Part shown: one piece after another, positions 2,402-21,807 of the stretch | Position numbering within the stretch: the stretch's first letter is position 1 | How the letters are laid out: every line of letters starts with the position of its first letter | Source of the DNA: Euprymna scolopes | Lineage: Eukaryota | Assembly: GCA_053919585.1 (NCBI GenBank) | Contig: CM132802.1 | Reading direction: 5' to 3' (one strand) | Length of the DNA: 64,000 nt | Notes under the pieces: generated by a model | Told to the model about the DNA's origin: nothing | Seen by the model: only the letters and a program-made list of their open reading frames with translations | Databases searched by the model: none | Position numbers and translations under genes: made by a program

Positions 2402-3008
2402 TGTAGTAGTAGTGACATCTATTCAATGTAGCCGCCTTCAGCCTCAATCACCAGTTCGATACGAACCCGGAACTTTGACCATGCCTTTTCGACATCGCCA
2501 GGGGAGCTCAACTAATACTCTGGGAATACTTGGCTTATGGCTGCGATCAGGCGGTTTTGGTGTTGTGGGAGGTCATTTTGTTGTTGTTCTCAACGTATAA
2601 CCAAACGAAGTAGCCCAATGGGTTCAGATCCTGGAAGAAGGGGGGTCAGGTATATAAGGGTACAAATCGTAGCACTTCTTTTGAAGCCAAGTTCTCTTGG
2701 CACACCCTAGGTCTGCTAGCCGCCAATAGTTGCACAAAGAAATCACCAAACTCTAGCACATCCAGGTACACTAAGGTGTTGACTTCGAAAAAGTGAGGTG
2801 GCAATGTCGCCCTACTTAGAAACAACATAAGACCGTAACCGTGGACGGAAACTTCGTTGATCTGTGCTCCTAAGCATTGAATCGTCAAGATTGGAAATTT
2901 GAGCGTGCTGGCAAGGTTCTGTTTAATAAGTTGGATCAGAATAGACCATCGGTTGTATAACGTCGCATCTCCGATCTCGATCGCTGAACATTGTGTCACT
3001 GTAAGACA
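2402..3008 (+). mobile_element. Possible solo LTR
   Basis: TGTAGTAGTAGTGACA...TGTCACTGTAAGACA imperfect inverted termini (TG...CA), GC-richer than flanks, TATA-like GTATATAAGG at ~2650; no TSD seen. Confidence 0.3.
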
Positions 3009-3714
3009 TGATAGAAGGATTATATCGTTCATGGGTTTTTTACCCCACTGGCCAGCTTCTAGATAGTATAAGAATAAATAAGTAAACAATTTTCATCGAG
3101 TGGAAATGGAATCATGGCTTTTCTATATTTATATTGTGCCAATAATTAAAGAAGAAATTATAAACTAGTAAACTTAAGTTTTTTTTTACAAGATAATGTT
3201 TAATGTGGACATCCGGTATTCAACACGACACACAACATTTATTTAGACTAATCGATTCGCCGGTCAAAACCATTAACATCATTTTCGCTAAATGATATTG
3301 TTTCGGTCTTGAGCAAAACTTAATATGCCAGAATGATGTACAGTCCTAGCATATATCTACCCGCATGCTTTACATCTTTTTTCTTGGGGGCAGTAACTTT
3401 CTTCCCTATCACCTCTCACGCCTCTACCGGAGAATTCCGAAGAGTTTCCTGAACCTTTTTATTCGGGGATCGGTACACAACCTTTCGATCGTCATACCTT
3501 ATAAAAACTCGACATTCACTCAGATGTTATCCTGTTACTTTAGAAGTACACAGATGTATAAATTCTACTGGTGTGCAAGCACATATAAAGACAGGAAACT
3601 GACTCGAAGACACTGGTTAATAAGTGTTATTGCGTCAGTGAGGCAGTACCGTAATATTCAGCGAAATCTTATTTATTTACCCTAGATGTCCACAAATGCT
3701 GAAAAGAATTATTT

Positions 3715-8198: not shown

Positions 8199-9054
8199 AA
8201 AGATACTTTTGTATAAAAATAAACATTCATAAATACACTATAGATTTCACAATATTTTCTAAGTAAATCAATATCGATTAATTTCAAAAGAAAAACAAAA
8301 TAAAATATTAAATAACGCATATCTTGTTGATCGATATACTAAAATGAATACAATTCACGAATTACCTAAATTTATATTTGGCGACTACAGTGAAATTAAA
8401 TGATTACGCAACACATTGACAAATACCGACAACTTCGCTTTCGATTTTCAGATTTTGTAATCATTCTTATATTCTTTTATTTTCTGTAAAAGTTGATAAA
8501 TTCTTGTCTACTTATGAGTTAGGAGCAGAATAATTTAACAAATTAACATAATAACTATTTGAAGTATTCTGCATTACGAAGCAGCTGCTGACATGGATTG
8601 AATTAAAAGTACTTAAAGAAATAAAGGGTAACCTGGTCAACATGTTGAGATCTTTAACAAAAAATTTGTCATTTATTTGTATATTCTCTGTAGTTACATT
8701 GAGCTTCATAAATAATAGGATTCGTATAAATAAAATGTGAAATGACTTTGATGGTATGTTGTCGATAGTCTCTTCAAAACTTCTCCCTGAATATGCGGTC
8801 TACAGTTGATATTTAATATGTAAATATTTTGATTTGTAGCAGAATTTCTATTTAGTTTTNNNNNNNNNNNNNNNNNNNNNNNNNNNNNNNNNNNNNNNNN
8901 NNNNNNNNNNNNNNNNNNNNNNNNNNNNNNNNNNNNNNNNNNNNNNNNNNNNNNNNNNNNNNNNNNNNNNNNNNNNNNNNNNNNNNNNNNNNNNNNNNNN
9001 NNNNNNNNNNNNNNNNNNNNNNNNNNNNNNNNNNNNNNNNNNNNNNNNNNNNNN

Positions 9055-9316
9055 TATTATTATTACTGTTATTATTCCTATTATTATTGTTATTTTATTA
9101 TCAATATTATTACTACTACTATTATTATTAGAACTATTATTATTACCATTATTATTACTATTATTATTACTAATATTATTACTATTATTATTACTATTAT
9201 TAATACTATTATTATTACTAATATTATTACTAATATTATTACTATTATTATTACTATTATTATTACTATTATTATTACTAATATAATTACTATTATTATT
9301 ATTAATATTATTATTT
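9055..9316. repeat. Degenerate (ATT)n/(ACT)n trinucleotide tract
   Basis: Seen directly; source of the spurious poly-Asn ORF. Confidence 0.9.
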
Positions 9317-10695
9317 AATGGGTGCATCATAATAATAAATAGACACTTTGCTCTATAATAATACCCACGGAATCTGCATGAATTAAAATATTTTAGCGTA
9401 TTATGGATCGGCCAACCCTGGACAACCGGCTAATGTATTCAAGTCATAATGTTTCTAAATGCTAGTAATCTGACTTAAAACGTATTTATCGGTGGGTAAA
9501 AATAGCGTCCGGAAAAATGCTATTTTTCTGTCTCGGCGTAAAATCTTCAGTAGTTCACGAGTTTAAATAATCCGGAATATTTCATGTTTTATTAGTTCAT
9601 GTTATCTCTATCTGTTATCTCTATCTTTAGTTCTGCTAGGACCTGTGCGTGTGTTTGCATGTGAGGGTGCGTTACGTATGGAGTTAAACACGTCTGGACA
9701 TATTTTTTATGCAAGATCACAACAATGTATGTTATGTATGTAAAAAGGTTTGTTGTGTTTTTTTCTTTTAGATATGATTTGCATCGGGATATCTTTTATA
9801 AGTATTGAACATCGATGATCGAAATAATCTGATGAAAGAAGTTACACTCCATTTTAAAGAAAGTTAACACCTTGCACAGTTTAACATCACAATTTGAGAA
9901 GTTTGTTTTACAACACAATTTTAAAGGCCAAAGATATAAACTAAACAGTGGGTTGTTTAATATGACAGGGAGTATTCGAAATACATCTGCACGTTTGAAA
10001 CTTAAACTCTAATTCAAGCTATTATAACCTAACAAGCAGTAAGATATACTGTTATATTATGTAATGCGATGAATGGTGAGTTCTTATCTAGCTGGGTGTG
10101 TTCTCTAATTTCCTTAACTACTTTCATTTAACTATCTTGTTTACAAGCCGTACTTGTAAAATCGCTGCCGTCTAGAAATGTCTCCTAGTGTGTGGATATA
10201 TGTGTGAACATATAAACCGAATACATAAATATGACGTGACGTACTTGGTCCTCTTTGGCGGTGGAGGACTGCTCATCGACATCTTCGGAGTTTACTCTAC
10301 TAAACAAATACAAACGCATGGCAAACGAACACTACACGATGATTATTTTTTTTTTAATATTTCTTATTCGACTCCACAGGTATAATCTCGGCAAACTGCA
10401 ATGGATCGACGATCTTGGCATGCGGACAACCCGGCTCCCCCTTTTTGAGAAGACCTTGGTTCTTACATCTTGTTATCCTTCGTGTCTAGAAACCAAGTCA
10501 AATCAAATTTACAAAATTTCCCCACACCCGAAATATTTTGCACGTCAGGTCCAGTCCTATCTACCTTATTTCCGGTGCAAAATTTGGTCGGTCATAGAGT
10601 TTGATCTATGTTAATCATGATACCCTGACTTTTCTTTGCATTTGCCAATTTCGCTAACTTTACTGTTTCTCACGATTGTTATTATTGATCTAGAT

Positions 10696-10765
<70 letters not shown>

Positions 10766-10777
10766 AATTCTGAATAA

Positions 10778-10900
10778 TTAGGTGCTTTACCGGCGTTGTC
10801 CGGCGGCTACAAACAGTGACATCAAAAGTATGCTTTTCGGTATGACAAAGACGCAGTCGAAATAAATGCTTCTGTTTAGAACATAATTGAAACACGATAC
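10778..10900 (-). mobile_element. Helitron-type 3' terminus
   Basis: Minus strand GCCGGACAACGCCGGTAAAGCACCTAA|T: CCGG/CCGG hairpin followed by CTAA, like the other Helitron ends in the window. Confidence 0.45.
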
Positions 10901-11550
10901 TTGAATTTTAAAGTTACACCTCAATACATCCATTATCTATAAAATCAATTTACTAAAAACAACATGACCTTCCAGACTGTTTAATATAGTCTATAATTTA
11001 TTGTGGAAAATATCTCCGCGGGGGAATTTATAGCTTTCTCCTGGTAACCCCATGATGGGTCCACAACTTAAGCAGGGAATCAATCAATTTGATTGAAAAT
11101 GGGCGACATCTCAGGTTTCAATGACAATAAATAAATATAGGAGTGTCATGCACCATTATTTGTTTTATCAATTCTATCAATCATCATTCAAGAACATCAA
11201 TGTCGGGTCTCTCTGCTAGTACGGAATAATCGACAAAATATTATTAGTTAAAGTATTAAACAAACGTGAGCACTGATATAACGAACATCTTTATAAATGA
11301 AGTTGTGTTAATATTATGCGTTAAGGTTATGGTGAGTATTATTTTCTAATAAATTATTAATTAGTACAGATGATTAAATAAAGAGAATTATCAGTAAAAT
11401 AAAAGAAAATTTACATGAAAATTGAAATGATCTGAAGTAATAATTATAAGAATTTACGAAACTTTTATGGAGATAAAAGTAAACAGAGGTAACCGTTCGT
11501 TTTGAAGTACTTTTATTGAATACCTAATTTAGCTTTGAAAAACACTGCTT

Positions 11551-11614
<64 letters not shown>

Positions 11615-11615
<1 letters not shown>

Positions 11616-12024
11616 TAGCAAAAGTCCCCGCCGTTGACTGGGTTCAAAAACAGCCTACATAAAATGGACTCTGATTTATCAAAGTATGATAGGTTATAAA
11701 AAGGAAGGGTTGTAAAGAGATAGCTTCGAATTTGGGCGTATCAAAACCAAAGCAAAATATGATGAAAGTAAAAATAAAATAGATAAACCCCATAATTTAT
11801 TATACCATACCTGTTCACACTGAAACACTGATCACAATATTCTCTGGATATATATTAAAAAAACTTGTTAAACTTTGTGACATATTTACATTCTATGGAG
11901 GTCAGGCGCGAACGAACATCTCATAATTTTATTATACCATATTTCCTCAAACTGAAACATAATTATCAAAGTATACTTGCGCAGATGGATATGAAAAGTC
12001 TTTATTAAAGTTTGTGCCTTTAAC
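11615..12024 (-). mobile_element. Non-autonomous Helitron, family C
   Basis: Minus-strand end ACCCAGTCAACGGCGGGGACTTTTGCTAG|T next to (TA)n; close homologues at 42953-43654 and 47300-47997; internal ~135-bp repeats. Confidence 0.75.
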
Positions 12025-12201
12025 GTTAATGATGTCGTACACATGTGTCACTCCAGGGCATCTTTGAAATTCACCGCGTTTATCAAAATTTAAAATTTCT
12101 CTAATCAGATACAATACCACAACTACAACCTCCTCCCCCTATAATGGTTTTAAAATATTGTCTATCTGATGTACTACAGTAACAGGATATTTTTTAGAAT
12201 A

Positions 12202-12722
12202 TTTTCTTTTTTACATAGGGATAACTTATTATCAAGGTCATGAGATCACTTTAGGATAAGGATTATTCAGTGTACAGTAGGCTCTGGGATTAAACTATAT
12301 TAATAGTTAGTAGTAGATATTTGGTAAATTAGATTACTTAAGGTGACAGTACATCAAGAATTTGTTTACGTTGGATATGAAGACTACCAAATTGTAGTCA
12401 AGTGAAAAACAGGCAAACGGAAGAGCGTTTTACAAGTTTGCAAGGTAAACGGAAGAGCCTTCCACAGGTGTGCAGTTCTAAGAAAGAAGCTTTGTTCATG
12501 GAATCTACGTGTTGGTTAAGGCGCACATAAGGAGTGGAGAAATTTATTGACAGTGGTTTTAGCTAGAGGAGTGTTTTTCGTGAAAGATGGCAGAGGAGGA
12601 ACCATAGATTGGAGCTTAGACGAGCATTTTCCATGGAAATAATGATAAAGCAGAGACAGGCTCGCAGTATCAATCCTGTTGCAAAGAGGTTGCAGGAAAG
12701 AGAAAAGGGCATCCCCCACTAA
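12202..12722 (-). mobile_element. CR1/Zenon-like LINE 3' fragment inserted in the Helitron Rep
   Basis: VGDALFSFLQPL..R...ASLSLLYHYFHGKCSS.LQS.VPP plus 3' tail; lies between Rep motifs I and II. Confidence 0.85.
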
Positions 12723-14152
12723 GCATCTATTTCCGAATCGGTTAATTGAACCACAATATGGGTAGCAACTGCTTTGATGATGCTATTCCAGTGAAATTTA
12801 TTTGCAACCCAAGTCATGAAAAAAGTTGGTCTACAATAAAAGCTTTTTCGCTAATATGTCAAGCTGCATGTTATTCCAAAACTATGGGCATCTCCGAATA
12901 ATTTTGAACGTTGGCATGTTCTTATGATCACATAGCATTTGTCGTAGGCTTTGTCTATCTTGTAAAAAAGCAAAGGAAGAATTAAAAACCTTCAGTTTTT
13001 GCTCCGAAAACAAAATGGCATAGTGAACAGATGTTCTTTCAAGTCAATCCAAAGCAAAGCATATATACTACGGTTTCGAAACAAATCTTGAATCACGATT
13101 TTGTAATTTGACATTTGGTAAATGTCTAGGAAAAGCCAGCACCACATAATGTGGCACGTCTGATGCAAATACACGGATCTGGCCTTCTCCAGGTGCAATG
13201 TATACAATGTAATAATTACGAATATCAGACCCATCTTCTATTTGCATGACATGCAACTGGCACAACTTCTTTATGTATACGGCGGGAATGAGTTGGTTGT
13301 CGTCAGAGTTTGAACCTCTCAAAACAACCTGGGCTGTGCTTTAAATAAGTAAAAAGTGCCCGTAGTTCTGCCGACAATTAGATAGCTGCACATCATGATA
13401 AAATGGGGTTATCATGTTCAACTTTCACAATCCTGATTTGACTGCACCTGACCTTATTTGTTGTGTTTATAAGGTTGTCTCTCAGAGAGCCTGCGTTTAA
13501 ATGGGAGACTGGCGAATTTCCATCACCACATGACCTTGCCAAAAACTTCGATATTTTGGTAAGATCGGTAGGAAACAAAAACGACCTGACGATTTAGTGG
13601 CACCCCACAAGAAACATATAATCCACAATCTAGTGTATCAACATTTACTTTAATGCACAAAAATCATCAAGTTCAGGGGCTTTTTCGCATAAAGAAAGGT
13701 TGTTCTCAACTCCTGCATGTGGTATATTGCCTTTCAGCATTTTTTAATTGCAGGATTGCAAATTCTGCACCGTCTTTATCCGTTAAAAGTTGGTGGCATG
13801 AAAGCTGAGAGATATTATTCTGCATGCAAAAGGCAATTATTTGATTTAAACTTTTTTCCACACCGGAGGTTGCACGTGTGACACGAATAATGTTTGCATT
13901 TTTTATGAAATTTTTTTATGGGTTGGTAAAATGCAGAATTTCAGGATCACAAGGGCAATGTCATTTACAGAATTTTTCTTTCCCACTACTGTTTCATTAG
14001 CCAATCTTCTGAGATCTGCTTTTCTGTTCTTAATTTTCAGCATTGCCTCTCCCTTTTCCTGTTCCCACAGAACTTTCTGTCATCCTCTTTTTTCCCCCGT
14101 ACATGTTTTTCCTCTTGTCGGCTTTTCTGTTCTAATCCTTCAGCTTTGCCTC

Positions 14153-14155
<3 letters not shown>

Positions 14156-14198
<43 letters not shown>
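14156..14198. repeat. (CT)n microsatellite
   Basis: Seen directly. Confidence 0.95.
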
Positions 14199-14201
<3 letters not shown>

Positions 14202-14369
14202 ACCCAACAGTTTTCGATAGTTTTTAGGGGCTAACTGTATTTGCACCCTTCTTTCTTCATCCATCCCTTTCCTGTTGTCAAATACTCTCTTTTTAAATAA
14301 CATTTAATTCACTTGCTTTATGCCTCTTGCCGTTAAAAGTGGCTTTATTTGTTTACAAGCCTAAGAATG

Positions 14370-15100
14370 CTTAATTCCTCGAAACATGTGAATATACTAA
14401 ATATTTCCTTGGATGGGAGAGCCCGTGCAACAAATATTACGCAAGAATTATTTTTGAGGGTAAATAATAAAAAAAAAAACATTTATTCCCTTAGACACTA
14501 AATTGGAAGGCTTTATTTTCGTTGTAGTCCCCTCTAGTCTGTAATAATGAAATCACTACAGGGGAATTATTATCACAGATTAGGCTTCAGTTATGGCATC
14601 AAATTTCCATGAGTTGTAATGCAAGCAACATGTAGGGCAATGACGGTCGTCCAGTTGCTCAGTTGGAAATTATTAAAGAGATCTGAAAGTGTTCGCACCT
14701 CACTTGTATGTGTATTTGAATTGAAAAGTAGTTGTTGATCACTGGCGCAGTGAAGGAGTAACGACATTAACACTCGGTAGACTCTTGAACCCGAACCTTA
14801 AATATGACATCAGTTTCCACGGAGGGGATGCTATGATCTAAGATGGAAATAAGCCACTCATTATAATCATATTGATTACGGGAATTCGTACTGCGGCAAG
14901 GGGATGTAAATGACCCAGCTAGAGCGCATAGCATTTGTTAATGTACCCATAGAATGGAATCGATTTTTGATCGTCGACCTCGAATTGGTTAAGAAATCAC
15001 TAGGCAAGGCATATGCTTTGAATATTTGCAGGTTGTACCAATTTTGAATGGCAGCATTGAAGAAGGAAATGTTACCAATGTTAATGAGACCGTTGCTTGT
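14370..15100 (-). pseudogene. Decayed ubiquitin-specific protease (peptidase C19) domain inside the Helitron ORF
   Basis: GLINIGNISFFNAAIQ (Cys box, 15044-15091), QYDYNEWLISILD (QQD box, 14836-14874), IFKVRVQESTEC*C, EQLDDRHCPTC, and a weak His-box-like stretch near 14390-14440. Confidence 0.7.
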
Positions 15101-15578
15101 TTGTTGTGCATGAACATGGTCAAAAATCAGTAATAATAATACAGGTCGTTACCACCTGAAGAAACTGGCTCTTGAATGGAGTGTCACATGTGCTTGAGAT
15201 TACTCTGAAAATAATTATTTACAACACCAGATTGAGGATGCATTTTTTCATATGTGGAGTCATCTTTGTTATCAAGAATCAACGCGAAACCCGAATATGT
15301 GAACTAAAATATAAAGTATTCAAAACTGTTTAAAACAACCAAATCATCAGCCAGGTAATTATAACTTATTGGTTACAGTAACTATTATTTAAGGTATGCT
15401 TGAATTTTTTACCGTATTTCCGATTGTTGGCTTCTCTGCTAAATCAATGGTTTAAAGCTCTAAATATTATTATTTTAAGGTACTGTGTTGATGACGCTAG
15501 TGCACGTACGATGCCATGCTATTTGTAATAGTAGTTAAATTCAGGTTTTACCGTATTTTTTATTATGAGTAGGAAATA

Positions 15579-15835
15579 GTTTTTTTTTTTTTTTTTTTTT
15601 TACAAAGGAGTCACCACTTATCAAGCCCCGGAGGTCACTCAAAGATAAGTGTAAATGAGTGTAAAGTGGTCAAGGGGAGCATGTCAGTCCTCGATAGTAG
15701 TGGAAACTTGGTAAATTGGATTACTTAAGGGGATGGCTCATCAAGAATTTGTTCACATTGGATTTGAAGACCACCATATTGTAGTCAGTTGGAAAGCAAG
15801 AAAATAAAACAGAGCTCCACAGACGTGCAGTTCTA
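15579..15835 (-). mobile_element. CR1/Zenon-like LINE 3' end with poly(A)
   Basis: Long poly(T) tract on + strand, gagtcaccacttatcaag terminus and C-terminal coding remnant. Confidence 0.85.
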
Positions 15836-18800
15836 TTTTCTTTAGATTTACATATTATTAGACTGGGAGAGTACTCCGAAGAGGTTTAGAAATGTACATG
15901 ATTGTGGGCCGTACGTAGTTGTATAAAAATATTACTGCCATCTCCAGCTAGAGATTCAATGTCTCTATCCACTGTGCCACGGGAAATAGTTACGAAACAC
16001 CTTACTCTCTCCTTCTTTAACATGGGTTTATAAATACTAATGTTGTTTGTTCAGTACGGTAACATAAGCGCAAAAGTACCGGGGTGAATTCCGCAATCGG
16101 TTAATAGTAACTTAAATAACACTCTGCGTTTGAAACAAATTTGTTTTCTTGTACATAGCGAAAAAATTCAATTATATCTTGCGTTTTACTCTTATTTGAA
16201 ATAAAAAGCGAGCAAATCATTGGTTTTTGAAAGTCATACAGAAATTAACAGGGATAAAACGGGAATATAAAAAAAACACTGTTATTGTATTTTTTTTTAA
16301 AAATTAAAATCATTACCTGCGTTGTTTCGTTGATAAATAAAGTCCTTTCGAAACGGAATGGCAGATGGAGTTGGAGAGAGGGGAAGTAGGGAGAGAGAAG
16401 GGTAGTTAGGTAACGTGAGGGATGGAAGAGAAAGGTTGGTTGACATGAAAGCAAGAAAAGTGTTTGAGTGAAAATAAAGATAGAAAAACATAGTAGTAGG
16501 AAGTGAGAATCAAATTGGCGGAATGAAACTGTAAGAAAAAACTTTTAAAAATATTCACTGAAAGAAAATATGAGGATTCTTATTTAGAAGGCAACATAAT
16601 TGTTTCAGAAACGGAAATGTCATATTCCAAAAATTACGTAAATCGATCGAGTAGTTTATTTTTAAAAAGAAAAGTATTTTTAGCGATGTATGTGAAATGG
16701 TTAGTATTACAAAGCTGAGTTTAAAAGTCAAATATTTATTGCGTTTTAAAATTATTAATACAAAAATTGATAAAACTGTGTTTGAAACAATGTTGTCTTG
16801 TCAGTAGTGGAAATTCAACTGTGTCTTATTTTGAAACTTATTTTGAATAAAATAGAAAAATAATTGTATCTTTAAAATTCATGTATGGATTAACATGGAT
16901 GAAATGTGGAATAAAATAAACAGTGTCAATGAAGATTTTTTTATTTGAATGAAAGCATTAATCACAAATTATTTTATTTGAAAGTAGCAAAATAAAATCT
17001 CCAGAGAATCGCTTGATTTTTAACTTTGCTATATGAGGTGTTCAAAAACCACTGAATCGAAAAAAAATCTCCAGAAAAAAAACACAGGATTTTAATTTTC
17101 ACCCTACAAAAAATGTCATGATGATAATAAAATTTCCCTGTTTACTCTCTATAGTTTTGGAACTATATTGAAACGGTTTGCTCTCAAAATTCCTGCCAAG
17201 TTTCATCAGCTAGTTTTCTGTTTTTCCTTAGAATTGTATTTTTGGTTTTGCCAGAAAAATAATAAAGTAAAAAGTTTGTTTATGGAAAATTTATAAAAGA
17301 ATTTTATAAATTAAACATCACAACAATGACAAACTTAAATATAGAATATTGCATAAGAAATTCTCCACAAATATCAGAAAAATCATTAATTGAAAAGGTT
17401 TCATTATACAATTATTTTTTCTTATTTTTGTGGAGTTCCTTAAAAAGACATCCATAAGCAGCAAGAATCAAATGTATACGTTATTAATTGATATATTTCA
17501 GAACCGATCTGGGAGGTTAAGTAAAAGTGGCACCCATAAAAATGGCCAAAATTTATGAATGGGGAAAATAACACAAGATAAACATCTCGAAAGTTTGGAG
17601 AAATATATAAAAGAGAAAACATTTAAGGAGTTTTGCAAATTAAAACAGAAATATAAAGTATATGTATATTTCCAAGTCGATGAGGACCCTGGGCTATCAT
17701 CTCCTAAAATGATATTCTGCTTTTTTAGACGATAACGTGTGATCACACCGAAGATATAGTTTAGATTAAAAGTAAATATCAGTATTCCTATCAATTTATA
17801 ACATTTTTGAACAAGTAATTAATCTTTTATATCCGTCATAGCTTAAGTCTAACAGGCAAAGTTGTAAAACCACACGTTACTACCTTTAAAGTAAAGCACA
17901 CGAAATTTATCTCTTATAGAAAACATGGTTATTAGTCTAAACTGTTACAAAGGTCTGGAAATGGGGGTGCTAATTTACACTAAACTGGGCAGGGCTTTTC
18001 ATGCCGCCCAGCATTAACAATCGAATCTATTTTGTTTGCTCTGCTCTGAATATTTAAAAATACCTAATCCAGGGTATAAGCTCACATTTTCGAATCTCTC
18101 TGGATTGAAAAACAAGCCTGAATTGATATGTTCTGGTTCACTTGCCTCTTCACGAGGGTATAGTTAAATAAACGTCGGATCTTAATGTGTAGAAGGCACT
18201 TTTAAAAAAAAGAGTTGCTAGCTAGAGTTGCTAGCTTCTAGTTTGTAACCTTATATTGTAAACCAATCGCTTCTATTAAAGATCACTCTCCGAATATATA
18301 ATCAATATTTGTAAAATCGAGTCTACAAGGGTTACTTCCCTTAAACTGTTAGCAAAAAAACTGTCGTAGAACTGTTATTTATTTTGCCTATTTAAACCCT
18401 CGATTGATGTAAACTATTAGGCTAAAACTGCCAAATGACACCGTTTCATGATAAACGTCTGATGTTTTTAATTCCGTATCATTACTAACCCCCATGAACT
18501 TTGTGAGAAAAATAAAAATTAGCACCAAAAGGTTTGTGTTCACCCCTAAATCACCCTGTGGCTCGAGTCCCAGAAGTTTTCCAGGGTCAAATATTACGTT
18601 TCCGGATATATATCAACCTGGTCATGCTTTTGGAAAATGTTCAGTAAAATCTAATTGTCGGAAAAGTTTATGTGTAGAAAATTGCTATTTTTATACATTT
18701 TGTACCACTTTTTGACCCCTTACGGACGGGAGCAGAATTTTATGAATAATCCGAGAATGTTACATTTCCTACCTTCGGTAATTTAAACTTCATACAAAAT

Positions 18801-18939
18801 TACTGCGACCAAGTACATTAATATGTTGACTGATCATTTACTACCCTACTTTGGTCTGAATTTGGATGATAATCCCAACTTCATGCAGGATAATTCTCCC
18901 ATTCACACAATTGGCAATATCAAGAGGTTCCTAGAAGTG

Positions 18940-19792
18940 CATGGTGTTCTCTGTTGAGATTAGCCTGCAAGATATCCAGCCCCAAATCCTTTCGAAAGCG
19001 TATGCCATTACATCAATCTGTTTTAAATCTAGGTTAGANNNNNNNNNNNNNNNNNNNNNNNNNNNNNNNNNNNNNNNNNNNNNNNNNNNNNNNNNNNNNN
19101 NNNNNNNNNNNNNNNNNNNNNNNNNNNNNNNNNNNNNNNNNNNNNNNNNNNNNNNNNNNNNNNNNNNNNNCGTTTATGTATATTCATGTTTATTTATTTA
19201 TTTTCTATTGTTTTGTTAGTTTTAAAACTATTTGTATCTCTATCCTAGAGTAAATTTTATCTTGTGAACACAGATGTTTGCTATTTCTCTTCTACGGTTT
19301 TATAGATGTTGGGGTTCTTTAAAGTACAGGTTAGCAAATTTTTCATGAAGCCATAATCTACATAGGTGGTCTAGGTCCGTTTACGTGGTAGCTTGTCTTA
19401 TTATTTTCCGTTCGACTTCCGACGAATGTCCGCTTTCCTTGAGTTCCCAGTATTTATTTGCTAGCGTTATTTTCATACGGTGTTTTTTTTTAATTTAAAC
19501 CGAACCTAGATTTAAAACAGATCCAGAAAACTAGATATCCAGGCTAAATAGAGCACACACAAAGGAACAGGTCAACCAAATAGACCTTTGTCCGATAAGT
19601 GCATGCTCATTGGCTGGAAGGGCGCGGTGGATACTAGAAAGCTGATTGGCTAACTAAAATCTCAATAGAAGATGCGTATATAAAAACGAAAAACAACCAC
19701 AAGATTCGCGCATAAGCCCGAAGTGTCCTAGAGTGGATGAAACGCGGAACATTCAGTGTAGCTTTATCGCCATATATACTTTATAACTTACT

Positions 19793-19795
<3 letters not shown>
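18940..19795. mobile_element. Penelope-like element remnant with inverted halves
   Basis: Minus strand 19240-19480 reads TLANKYWELKE...LCRLWLHEK...*NRRREIANICVHKIKF (GIY-YIG C-terminus); 19016-19035 is the reverse complement of 19503-19522; plus-strand tail ends in a hammerhead motif. Confidence 0.7.
19708..19770 (+). ncRNA. Type I hammerhead ribozyme motif, family 2, core mutated
   Basis: ATAAGC-CCGAAGT-GTCC/GGAT-GAAA-stem III-GTA-GCTT; core differs from CUGANGA at two positions. Confidence 0.6.
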
Positions 19796-19836
<41 letters not shown>

Positions 19837-19838
<2 letters not shown>

Positions 19839-20705
19839 GTGAACGTATTTGTGTGTGTCGCTCTGTGTGTACATGTGTACATTTCCCTACGCAATAAATC
19901 TGTCAATTTTACGTCTACAGACTTGAAATTTGATATACAAGGTTACTGATATTTGGGAAAATCATTGTAATCCGTTTTCGGACAGAAATTTCGCTGTTAA
20001 CCGGTGAAAGTTTTCCGATTTTACCTTAGAGAACTCTACCCAATTATCCGCCCATTTTAGGTCTAAACACTTCAAATTTTAGATATAGGTTCCTTGGACA
20101 TAAATCAAACTTAATAATTTGATTTGAGGCAAGAACAATAAATGTAAAGGTGTCATAATAGGTGGCAAAGTTTAAAAAAAATTGACCCCTGCGGTCTCTA
20201 CTAAATTACTTAGACACTTTCTGGTCTAAACATTTGAACTTTTACATAAAGGGTATTTAGAGATAGGGCCAGCTTTTTAATCTGTCTTGGTCTAACATTT
20301 TTAGTTACCACTATATAAATGTATGTATGTTTGCATGTCTGCCTTAAAATTTCGACAGAGGCGACGAATCTTTACAAGATCAGTATCATTTTGAAGTTCG
20401 ACCTTTCAGACGACAAATATGAAAAAATTGGTAAAGTCATTAATATCTTCACCTTCAACTGGCCACTTTTCTACAGAGGAGGTCGCTCTTTTCGCCGATA
20501 TTTTCGACAGTCATCTTCTCCTTTCGATTGTAAAACCGTGATTATAACTTACGTAACTTCTGGTTTTGCGGTGGTCCTAACAGCAAAGCCGGCACGTTTT
20601 TATCCCGGTATATCACTCCTTCGCAATACAGATTCGAGCCTGCCTTCCTGCTAACAGTTTTTTTTTGTTTTTTGCTCAACACACACCGCCAAACACCCGG
20701 GCAAC
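19837..20705 (+). mobile_element. Non-autonomous Helitron, family B (3' end runs into gap)
   Basis: Colinear with the reverse complement of 48836-49722; ends CACCCGGGCAAC at the gap edge. Confidence 0.75.
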
Positions 20706-21807
20706 NNNNNNNNNNNNNNNNNNNNNNNNNNNNNNNNNNNNNNNNNNNNNNNNNNNNNNNNNNNNNNNNNNNNNNNNNNNNNNNNNNNNNNNNNNNNNNN
20801 NNNNNNNNNNNNNNNNNNNNNNNNNNNNNNNNNTAAATAAAAAATGTTAGCGTGGTCGAACGTTTCCATATTACAGTGTTCGTAATTATGAAAGATTAGG
20901 AAGTTATGCGTCAAAAGAATCTAAATAATAATTTATTTGTCTGTACGTCCAGTGTCACACACAATTTTCATTATCGAACACGTTAATTAATGAAAATAAA
21001 TCACCTGTCTCTATGGTCGCTCATTATCAGTTAAAAATCATTAAAACTGTTTCCTCTACAAAATTTAAAATAAAACTCATGGTTGTCATTTATTGTTTCG
21101 AATTGGCTATTTTCAGTTTATAATTTAAAAAAAAAGTAATGTAGTAGGAGGGATGTAATTTTCTTTTATAGATTCTTTTTGTAAATTTAAGATTTGTGCA
21201 AGAAAGTGACATATGTTTGTTTCTAATTATATAAAATTATTAAGGATAAAAACAATGTATATTGTCTGTGAATATTCATTGCAAAAAAATCAAAACATTC
21301 TTCATAGATTCCAAAAACTAAAGAATAAATTTGCTGAATTTGTTTTTAGCTCAAGGTTATACGCCTTTTTTATTTATACATAAGTAGTGTGAACTATCCA
21401 CGGGTTATGCGAGTTAAATGTAATTGTTAAATGAAAGCACCCATCAAATTAAAAGCCATAAATACGGACGAGACGTTTTATATTAATATGATTATTAGTT
21501 AAATTCCATTAAGTCTCACGCATATCCATGACTAAATACATTAAGACATTAGTTTAGTATACTTTTAAATAGAAAAAAAAATGATTGAAATAGATGTGTA
21601 GAGAAAATATGATTAATCAATTATATCCCATAATTTCTTTATACAAATACTATTTATGGACCTCGACGTATGTTGAATAAAACTACATATGATATAAAAA
21701 TAGATGACAAAGTGTGTTTATTCTTAATTCCGAGACGTTGTTTTATTACCGTTTATTTTTCTCAGCATGTAAAAATTCTTGCTTCTTATAACCATATGTA
21801 CATATAT

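What the first reader, a model, noticed from the sequence alone, without database searches (positions are those of the whole stretch)
12025..15100. Helitron/Helentron-type transposon carrying a USP (peptidase C19) deubiquitinase domain
Seen: on the minus strand, in one orientation and in order, a USP Cys box GLINIGNISFFNAAIQ (consensus GLxNxGNTC[YF]xN[SA]xxQ; the catalytic codon is TCC, one change from TGC), a QQD-like box QYDYNEWLISILD, IF...S..C*C, EQLDDRHCPTC and a weak His-box region. Then come an E/K/R-rich linker, a Cys-rich DUF6570-like stretch (FKRRLS...NP), IAPGEG/LAFP/DSRF, Rep motif I (PTFFMTW...W) and motif II (EFQ...HVY). Established: Helentrons are known to carry OTU-type cysteine proteases in this N-terminal position. 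Inference: this lineage uses a USP-family protease instead, which I do not know to have been described. It could be a transposon-encoded deubiquitinase or polyprotein-processing protease. This copy is dead.
Basis: partly seen in the sequence, partly recalled or inferred. Interest (0 to 1): 0.82.

Follow-up and report, generated by a model that had tools for sequence, protein, structure and literature searches.

The report
Dead Helentron transposon with N-terminal USP
This is a decayed, truncated copy of an old rolling-circle transposon (Helentron type) whose protein began with a ubiquitin-specific protease domain; the layout is real and shared with an octopod and a jellyfish, but USP domains in such elements were already catalogued in 2024.

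Summary
The window element is a dead, 3'-truncated copy of an old, low-copy Helentron-clade (HLE2) family. It carries two repeat insertions.

Its order is: 5' repeat X, leader, USP, E/K/R linker, zinc finger plus DUF6570, then Rep up to motif II. It stops at about 12035. No helicase remains in the window.

Three paralogous loci keep the USP collinear with the zinc finger/DUF6570, and two of them continue into Rep. Their Cys and His boxes are intact.

An Argonauta hians locus has USP, linker and the DUF6570 start in one 590-aa ORF. Rep, PIF1 and an endonuclease-like domain follow. A Clytia hemisphaerica locus is collinear with it. So the USP belongs to the transposase and is not an adjacent pseudogene or a tandem-copy artefact.

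The novelty is overstated. HELIANO (NAR 2024) already lists UCH among the domains stably carried by HLE2. Public proteomes hold many RepHel+USP proteins in a single ORF.

The same genome also has young, intact Helitrons with a C-terminal USP, as other first-stage notes of this scan reported elsewhere in this genome. A USP tree puts the N-terminal and C-terminal types in separate clades.

Verdict: real, a new member of a known kind, of modest interest.

The parts
17378..18801 (-). Repeat X. It is the upstream 5' region of the element and is itself a high-copy repeat. Deletion derivatives join it directly to the Rep fragment.
   Evidence: It is 73% identical to L040 9847-8949 and L041 8832-7889, where it abuts the equivalent of window ~13075. 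The genome search gave 1847 first-look candidates. X lies 0-22 bp from Rep-N at C21:81.04M and C31:66.04M.
15150..16757 (-). Leader between X and the USP, shared with the C22 copy. It holds a ~620-bp interspersed-repeat insertion at about 15384-16006.
   Evidence: Window 16757-16007 and 15383-15247 align to L034 2197-3144 with 16007-15383 missing there. Window 15835-15580 matches the same repeat as 12719-12202 (L036 ~2993-3487).
14449..15148 (-). USP (peptidase C19) remnant: Cys box 15044-15091 (Cys to Ser, TCC), QQD box 14836-14874, zinc-ribbon CxC ~14770 and CxxC 14628-14660. It is spread over three frames with stops.
14430..14448 (-). Site of a ~380-bp deletion that removed the His box and the C-terminal end of the USP.
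   Evidence: MAFFT alignment with L032 8300-8950 and L034 5230-5800. The His box is present in L034 (SGHYTFIIRGG) and L038 (SGHYTAMICRGDTWFFLND).
13760..14429 (-). E/K/R-rich linker, including a (GA)n-type RERERE run at 14172-14199.
   Evidence: It is homologous to the L032 249-aa ORF 8614-9360 (E=1e-8). The Argonauta protein has an equivalent RKDEQRQRDSVRKS repeat linker.
13300..13759 (-). Cys-rich zinc-finger-like stretch and DUF6570 remnant (FKRRLS 13484-13501).
   Evidence: tblastn of Argonauta residues 517-590 to window 13755-13552 gives E=4e-7. Pfam calls that Argonauta stretch DUF6570 at 27.7 bits.
12723..13299 (-). Rep (Helitron_like_N) N-terminal part: IAPGEG 13179-13199, LAFP, DSRF, motif I PTFFMTW 12809-12829.
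   Evidence: tblastn of the Argonauta DUF6570/Rep ORF gives E=2e-14. Paralog matches run from 1e-15 to 8e-12.
12210..12722 (-). Insertion of an interspersed repeat that resembles the 3' tail of a non-LTR retrotransposon. It is not part of the Helentron.
   Evidence: Copies L033, L034 and L036 join window 12722 directly to 12209. The translation ...FFLRTAHLWKALP... is seen.
12035..12209 (-). Rep motif II region (EFQRCPGVTHVY 12037-12072) and the truncation point of this copy at about 12035.
   Evidence: tblastn of Argonauta residues 315-365 gives E=7e-5. Beyond ~12035 the copies diverge. No Rep-C, helicase or endonuclease remnant is found anywhere in the window.

Best explanation
The window holds a dead, 3'-truncated, insertion-riddled copy of an old, low-copy Helentron-clade (HLE2) rolling-circle transposon.

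When intact, the family's single transposase protein read as follows:
- a short basic start (M-x-x-GRPKK),
- a USP-type cysteine protease domain,
- an E/K/R-rich linker,
- a zinc finger plus DUF6570,
- the HUH Rep nuclease,
- a PIF1 helicase,
- a C-terminal AP-endonuclease-like domain.

The architecture, and the fact that the USP belongs to the transposase ORF, are shown. The function is inferred. The USP most likely acted as a deubiquitinase that protected the transposase or transposition factors from ubiquitin-dependent removal. This is by analogy with the VTD deubiquitinases of zebrafish Helentrons, which are enzymatically active (PMC9741609).

In this copy nothing works. The catalytic Cys is Ser, the His box is deleted, frames are broken, and Rep-C, helicase and endonuclease are gone.
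For: - Motifs and coordinates.
- Paralogs at 70-81% nucleotide identity keep the order USP-linker-DUF6570-Rep. Their Cys box is intact: L032 GLINIANTCFFNAVIQ scores UCH 25.5 bits and L038 scores 24.6 bits, both above the 23.9 cut-off. His boxes are present in L034 and L038.
- The C22 copy (L034/L035) carries USP, Rep, Rep-C and helicase in line.
- L038 has a 289-aa ORF running from the USP His box into the linker, and then a 235-aa zinc finger/DUF6570 ORF.
- Argonauta hians GAB1600976.1 and its locus L043 show one 590-aa ORF with USP+linker+DUF6570 start. Helitron_like_N (51.6 bits) and PIF1 (78 bits) follow, then an endonuclease-like domain. The Atlas feature search matches that last domain to Exo_endo_phos clusters at 0.95.
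- Clytia hemisphaerica L044 positions 10481-21337 are collinear with the Argonauta element at 29-64% amino-acid identity.
- The start motif GRPKK lies 30-50 aa before the Cys box in L038, L032, Argonauta, P0003, P0004 and P0005.
- The USP fold is supported by a match to USP36 (8bs3), E=8.5e-6 over residues 18-253.
- No helicase lies upstream of the USP.
- In the USP tree the N-terminal type forms its own clade at 100/98, separate from the C-terminal type.
Against: - No intact copy of this N-terminal-USP family was found in this genome. Only four USP-bearing loci exist and all are decayed. The single-ORF claim therefore rests on Argonauta and on long ORF fragments.
- Pfam gives only a sub-threshold UCH hit on the window itself. 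It gives no DUF6570 or Helitron_like_N hit on window pieces.
- The endonuclease domain has no Pfam or PDB sequence hit.
- The element's termini were not defined.
- Deubiquitinase activity is untested for any Helitron USP.
- More than ten Rep fragments of the family lack the USP. I read these as deletion derivatives, but the direction (deletion versus insertion of a 4.3-kb block) is argued from parsimony and not shown.
Confidence: 0.85

Rival explanations
1. Tandem-copy artefact. The USP would be the C-terminal domain of an upstream Helitron copy (as in this genome's young Rep-Hel-USP families), followed head-to-tail by the N-terminus of the next copy.
For: The same genome has abundant intact Helitrons with the USP after PIF1: L018 2231 aa, with UCH at 1951-2211. 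Helitrons are known to form tandem arrays (established knowledge).
Against: No helicase remnant lies upstream of the USP in the window or in L034. A conserved M-x-x-GRPKK start sits just before the Cys box in several lineages. In Argonauta the USP, linker and DUF6570 start share one ORF. The window-family USP does not match the C-terminal USPs. It falls in a different clade, with the split supported at 99/96.
Confidence: 0.03
2. A host USP pseudogene or captured host gene fragment that merely sits next to a Helitron fragment, copied together by segmental duplication.
For: Helitrons capture host gene fragments (established). Two of the copies lie 0.5 Mb apart on C21 and share flanks (L033/L036). 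Most Rep fragments lack the USP.
Against: The same order recurs on four chromosomes with different flanks. It also recurs in Argonauta and Clytia at 29-64% amino-acid identity. Reading frames run from the USP into the linker and DUF6570. The USPs form a dedicated clade with a family-specific N-terminal motif.
Confidence: 0.04
3. The USP domain served as a cis-acting polyprotein-processing protease that released Rep-Hel from an N-terminal part, and did not act as a deubiquitinase on host or transposase ubiquitin conjugates.
For: The domain is fused in frame at the N-terminus of a very long multidomain protein. Intact relatives also carry a 2A-like D(V/I)ExNPGP recoding motif upstream, which shows that a polyprotein expression strategy is in use. 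Viral papain-like proteases combine both roles (established knowledge).
Against: No ubiquitin-like domain or conserved LRGG-type site was noticed in the linker, though I did not search for one systematically. The other protease classes fused to Helentrons are OTU and VTD. The VTDs were shown to cleave ubiquitin and NEDD8 chains (PMC9741609). The domain has the canonical USP boxes and zinc ribbon.
Confidence: 0.08

Closest known systems
HLE2 (Helentron/Helitron2 clade) elements carrying a UCH (PF00443) domain, as catalogued by HELIANO (Li et al., NAR 2024, PMC11417382)
   Same: Both have DUF6570-marked RepHel with a USP/UCH domain at a conserved position relative to RepHel. The paper reports UCH as almost exclusive to HLE2 and enriched in its subgroups c and d.
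   Different: The paper counts UCH among the domains encoded in ORFs separate from RepHel and gives no anatomy. Here the USP is at the extreme N-terminus and in frame with the linker and DUF6570 in Argonauta, with a GRPKK start motif. The window copy is a dead fragment. I could not tell which HELIANO subgroup it belongs to.
Helentrons with OTU and/or VTD (Herpes_teg_N) deubiquitinase domains (Erven et al., Nat Commun 2022, PMC9741609; Thomas & Pritham review as cited there)
   Same: Both have a cysteine-protease deubiquitinase-type domain fused upstream of Rep-Hel-EN in endonuclease-bearing rolling-circle elements of aquatic animals. The proposed role is the same: protecting transposition proteins from ubiquitin-dependent degradation.
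   Different: The protease class differs (USP/C19 instead of OTU or VTD). VTD activity was shown biochemically, whereas no Helitron USP has been assayed.
This genome's young Rep-Hel-USP Helitrons (L018, L017, L019) and their public relatives in insects, sturgeon and others
   Same: They are HLE2-type (DUF6570, Helitron_like_N, PIF1) with a USP domain in the same ORF.
   Different: Their USP is C-terminal, after PIF1, with no endonuclease-like domain. Many copies are intact (2231-2256 aa ORFs). Their USPs form a separate clade (99/96) from the N-terminal type and do not detectably match the window.

Membership tests
Helitron-like element, HLE2/Helentron clade | HUH Rep domain (Helitron_like_N) with motifs I and II | tested here: met
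   The window aligns to the Argonauta Rep ORF at E=2e-14 and 7e-5, and Pfam calls that ORF Helitron_like_N at 51.6 bits. PTFFMTW and EFQ..H.Y are present. Pfam on window pieces alone gives no hit. The Tyr motif region is missing because the copy is truncated.
Helitron-like element, HLE2/Helentron clade | PIF1-type helicase downstream of Rep | tested here: not met
   It is absent from the window copy. It is present in family copies L040, L035 and L036 and in Argonauta (PIF1 78 bits). The family meets this feature, while the window copy is a truncated fragment.
Helitron-like element, HLE2/Helentron clade | DUF6570 N-terminal to Rep (HLE2 marker according to PMC11417382) | tested here: met
   Window 13755-13552 matches the Argonauta stretch at E=4e-7, and that stretch scores DUF6570 27.7 and 27.1 bits. 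No direct Pfam hit was obtained on window pieces.
Helitron-like element, HLE2/Helentron clade | C-terminal AP endonuclease (Helentron in the strict sense) | tested here: inconclusive
   It is not in the window. The domain after PIF1 in Argonauta, Clytia and L040 is conserved. It shows ...CFTET..., GDFNFD and SDH motifs. The Atlas feature search gives 0.95 to Exo_endo_phos clusters. There is no Pfam or PDB sequence hit.
Helitron-like element, HLE2/Helentron clade | Defined termini, 3' hairpin and T-T target site | not tested
   The 3' end is missing from the window copy. The 5' edge is provisionally at 18801.
USP / peptidase C19 (Pfam UCH PF00443) | Cys box with catalytic Cys | tested here: not met
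   The box is present in the window at 15044-15091, but the catalytic residue is Ser (TCC). Pfam gives 18.8 bits, below the 23.9 cut-off. Paralogs L032 and L038 and Argonauta keep the Cys, and L032 and L038 pass the Pfam cut-off.
USP / peptidase C19 (Pfam UCH PF00443) | His box (GHY...) and the Asp/Asn box | tested here: not met
   They are deleted from the window copy. They are present in L034, L038, P0001 (UCH 42.4 bits), Argonauta and P0003-P0005.
USP / peptidase C19 (Pfam UCH PF00443) | Overall USP fold with QQD box and zinc-ribbon cysteines | tested here: met
   The window has QYDYNEWL, CxC and CxxC. The Argonauta homolog matches USP36, USP9X and USP14 catalytic domains, E=8.5e-6 over residues 18-253.
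USP / peptidase C19 (Pfam UCH PF00443) | Deubiquitinating activity | not testable with these tools
   This needs a biochemical assay of an intact relative.

The most novel reading that the evidence does not exclude
Rolling-circle transposons of the HLE2 clade may have acquired USP deubiquitinase domains at least twice. One acquisition would be at the extreme N-terminus of endonuclease-bearing Helentrons, a lineage shared by cnidarians and cephalopods with a GRPKK start and, in intact members, an upstream 2A-like recoding peptide. The other would be at the C-terminus of endonuclease-less Rep-Hel proteins. Together with OTU and VTD, that would make four protease classes recruited convergently. 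It would argue that removing ubiquitin is a near-essential accessory function for this transposon class. The window would be a fossil of the first lineage.
Probability: 0.5. Interest if true: 0.5.

Novelty: new member of a known kind. Interest (0 to 1): 0.33.

Why it matters
The window copy is a fossil with no function. Its value is as a pointer to three things.

- A USP domain is a genuine in-frame part of a Helentron transposase lineage that spans cnidarians and cephalopods.
- The same genome hosts a second, thriving Helitron lineage with the USP at the other end of the protein.
- With OTU and VTD already known, this suggests that these transposons repeatedly recruit deubiquitinases. That makes the question "what does ubiquitin do to Helitron transposition?" experimentally approachable with intact relatives.

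For annotation, the locus should be masked as a transposon and not called a USP pseudogene.

Tried and rejected
- Pfam on ten window pieces gave only a sub-threshold UCH hit.
- tblastn and phmmer with this genome's young Helitron proteins (helA, helB, helC) against the window gave nothing meaningful, even at E=50. The window family is too distant from them.
- The search for homologous proteins with the helA USP region and with the P0013 USP region returned nothing beyond the query itself.
- Pfam and PDB sequence searches failed to name the endonuclease-like domain.
- HELIANO supplementary tables are not held, so the UCH position and subgroups could not be read.
- The tandem-array and adjacent-pseudogene readings were considered and rejected (see rival explanations).
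- I first suspected that repeat X encoded the family's DUF6570. Its translation is non-coding in appearance and it is a high-copy repeat.
Neither was needed for the verdict.
Full report
**Observation**

Exact coordinates come:
- Cys box GLINIGNISFFNAAIQ: 15044-15091.
- QYDYNEWLISILD: 14836-14874.
- EQLDDRHCPTC: 14628-14660.
- RERERE run: 14172-14199.
- FKRRLS: 13484-13501.
- IAPGEGQ: 13179-13199.
- PTFFMTW: 12809-12829.
- EFQRCPGVTHVY: 12037-12072.

The codon at the catalytic position is TCC. The pieces lie in different frames and are separated by stops, so the copy is dead.

Pfam on the window pieces alone gives only UCH at E=0.0014 and 18.8 bits, below the 23.9 cut-off. On its own the window is therefore suggestive but not conclusive.

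**Genome context**

The window is C20:95294001-95358000 of a 5.9-Gb assembly with 46 large contigs. A six-frame search of the whole genome with PF00443 found 142 matches. About a hundred of these are intronless UCH domains inside very long open frames, and many of those frames are exactly 2256 aa.

One of them, L018:171-6863, is 2231 aa from its ATG. Its domains are DUF6570 (543-678), Helitron_like_N (778-962), PIF1 (1435-1860) and UCH (1951-2211). Two further families (L017, L019) have the same order.

So this genome has young, intact Helitrons with a C-terminal USP. Two other first-stage notes of this scan reported such PIF1-USP fusions elsewhere in the genome. These families do not detectably match the window.

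That raised a rival reading: the window's "N-terminal" USP could be the tail of an upstream tandem copy.

**The window's own family**

A DNA search with window 12700-15200 found a few copies at 70-81% identity. I fetched them and aligned them.
- C21:68.86M (L032/L033) and C22:59.46M (L034/L035) carry the USP part, the linker, the DUF6570 part and the Rep part in the same order.
- C21:68.39M (L036) carries the linker through to Rep.
- All three join window 12722 directly to 12209. So 12210-12722 is a foreign repeat insertion, and the same repeat also sits at about 15384-16006.

The copies are better preserved than the window.
- L032 reads GLINIANTCFFNAVIQ with the catalytic Cys.
- L034 has the His box ...ANSGHYTFIIRGG....
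- A more distant copy, C37:52.38M (L038, 43% amino-acid identity), was found with a USP piece. It reads MMLGRPKKLRRFRG...LVNIGNTCFFNSAMQ.
- L038 then has a 289-aa ORF that holds ...EQANSGHYTAMICRGDTWFFLNDSVIE...VPYIRFYVK and runs on into the linker. A 235-aa ORF with the zinc finger and the start of DUF6570 follows.
- Pfam scores the Cys-box pieces of L032 and L038 above the UCH cut-off, at 25.5 and 24.6 bits.

An alignment shows that the window lost about 380 bp at roughly 14430-14448.

**Relatives in other animals**

A full HMMER search of 1.84 billion representative proteins with the L038 289-aa piece returned P0013. This is an 820-aa partial protein of Argonauta hians (GAB1600976.1). It has a USP C-terminal half, an RKDEQRQRDSVRKS repeat linker, DUF6570 and Helitron_like_N.

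Its genomic locus, L043, reads as follows:
- A start MQRGRPKKK, followed by the Cys box GLLNGGTNVCFF.
- One 590-aa ORF with the rest of the USP, the linker and the first half of DUF6570.
- A 455-aa ORF with the second half of DUF6570 and Helitron_like_N.
- An LTR-retrotransposon insertion.
- Rep-C, PIF1, and a last domain with CFTET, GDFNFD and SDH motifs.

That last domain has no Pfam or PDB sequence hit. The Atlas feature search assigns it to Exo_endo_phos clusters at 0.95.

Using the Argonauta ORFs as a scaffold, the window aligns collinearly. The matches are USP QQD box at 7e-4, zinc finger/DUF6570 at 4e-7, and Rep at 2e-14 and 7e-5. The alignment ends at 12055 with nothing further anywhere in the window.
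- The C22 copy carries USP, Rep, Rep-C and helicase.
- L040 (C18) carries Rep, helicase and the endonuclease-like domain.
- In Clytia hemisphaerica the UCH gene XP_066926765.1 (P0020) lies in a stretch collinear with the whole Argonauta element, USP-linker-DUF6570-Rep-Hel-EN, at 29-64% amino-acid identity.
- Metagenomic proteins P0003, P0004 and P0005 share the GRPKK start, the USP and the K/E/R-rich tail.
- The Argonauta USP matches the USP36 catalytic domain at 8.5e-6 over residues 18-253.

**Rival readings**

- Tandem artefact:
  - No helicase lies upstream of the USP.
  - A conserved start motif precedes the Cys box.
  - USP and DUF6570 share an ORF in Argonauta.
  - In a maximum-likelihood tree of 41 USP domains, the C-terminal RepHel USPs form one clade (99/96) and the GRPKK N-terminal USPs form another (100/98).
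  - The two host USPs I had sit on the N-terminal side of a 100/95 split.
- Adjacent pseudogene: the same order occurs on four chromosomes and in two other phyla.

**Deletion derivatives and repeat X**

More than ten Rep fragments of the family begin sharply at the equivalent of window ~13058-13075 and lack the USP. In L040 and L041, and by coordinates at C21:81.04M and C31:66.04M, that point is joined directly to a sequence homologous to window 18801-17378, which I call repeat X.

X is itself a high-copy repeat, with 1847 first-look candidates. In the window it lies in the same orientation 2.2 kb upstream of the USP.

I read X as the 5' region of the element and the short forms as internal-deletion derivatives. 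The 4.3 kb they lack contains DUF6570 and the Rep N-terminus, which are collinear with the Argonauta and Clytia ORFs. This direction is an inference.

**What is already known**

- HELIANO (NAR 2024, PMC11417382) lists UCH among 20 domains stably included in Helitron-like elements. It reports UCH as almost exclusive to HLE2 and enriched in subgroups c and d. It counts UCH among the domains encoded in ORFs other than RepHel.
- Erven et al. 2022 (PMC9741609) showed that VTD domains of zebrafish Helentrons are active deubiquitinases. They also noted OTU domains in such elements and proposed protection of transposition proteins.
- A database search with the helicase+USP part of L018 returned many single proteins combining PF00443, PF14214, PF05970 and PF20209. 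They come from insects, sturgeon and metagenomes.
- Pfam scans show that most have the USP at the C-terminus. P0118 (3191 aa) has it at residues 16-321, and P0130 and P0165 also have it near the N-terminus.
- No paper in the library discusses a Helitron USP beyond the HELIANO listing.

**Verdict**

The thing is a fossil member of a kind that has been catalogued but hardly characterised.

The deubiquitinase function is inferred and untested. The N-terminal in-frame position, the GRPKK start, the spread across cnidarians and cephalopods, and the likely separate origin from the C-terminal USP lineage are modest additions.

Noticed in passing
L018:171-6863 (-) = G000:C1:120938170-120944862; also L017:5905-9600 (-) and L019:122-6075 (-): Young, intact, multi-copy Helitrons with the USP at the C-terminus after PIF1 (DUF6570-Rep-PIF1-UCH, 2231 aa). 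Dozens of loci have an identical 2256-aa open frame, so the family is probably still active in this genome.
   Followed up: partly
L044 (+) 10238; L018 (-) 6815; L019 (-) 6914; proteins P0004, P0008, P0020, P0034, P0043, P0049, P0107: A canonical 2A-like recoding motif D(V/I)ExNPGP lies near the N-terminus of several Helitron-like ORFs. In some it is upstream of the GRPKK-USP module, and it also occurs in this genome's young C-terminal-USP family. None was found in the window copy. No paper in the library holds both 'Helitron' and '2A-like'.
   Followed up: partly
window 17378-18801 (-): Repeat X is a very abundant interspersed repeat (1847 first-look candidates). Many copies cover only query 1-700 or only 730-1424. 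It may be the non-autonomous partner (HINE-like) of this Helentron family.
   Followed up: partly
protein P0004 (MCH2406271.1): This protein is annotated as a ubiquitin carboxyl-terminal hydrolase of a Nitrosopumilus MAG. It falls inside the Helentron N-terminal USP clade and carries the GRPTKRKGF motif and a 2A-like motif. It is probably eukaryotic DNA binned into an archaeal MAG.
   Followed up: partly
window 18823-18957 (+): An ORF fragment ...FMQDNSPIHT... looks like the C-terminal DDE region of a Tc1/mariner transposase. It lies directly beside the 5' edge of repeat X and next to an N run at 19039-19170.
   Followed up: no
L032 4331-7904; L043 13680-15639: LTR-retrotransposon insertions (gag zinc knuckles, RNase H and integrase; rve 54 bits) interrupt the USP of the C21 paralog and the Rep of the Argonauta element.
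   Followed up: partly
L001 = G000:C9:130853221-130857258: This is the strongest UCH match in the genome (171.9 bits, full profile) and lies in a 3809-aa open frame without stops. In the tree it groups with a bird USP, so it is probably a host USP with a giant exon.
   Followed up: no
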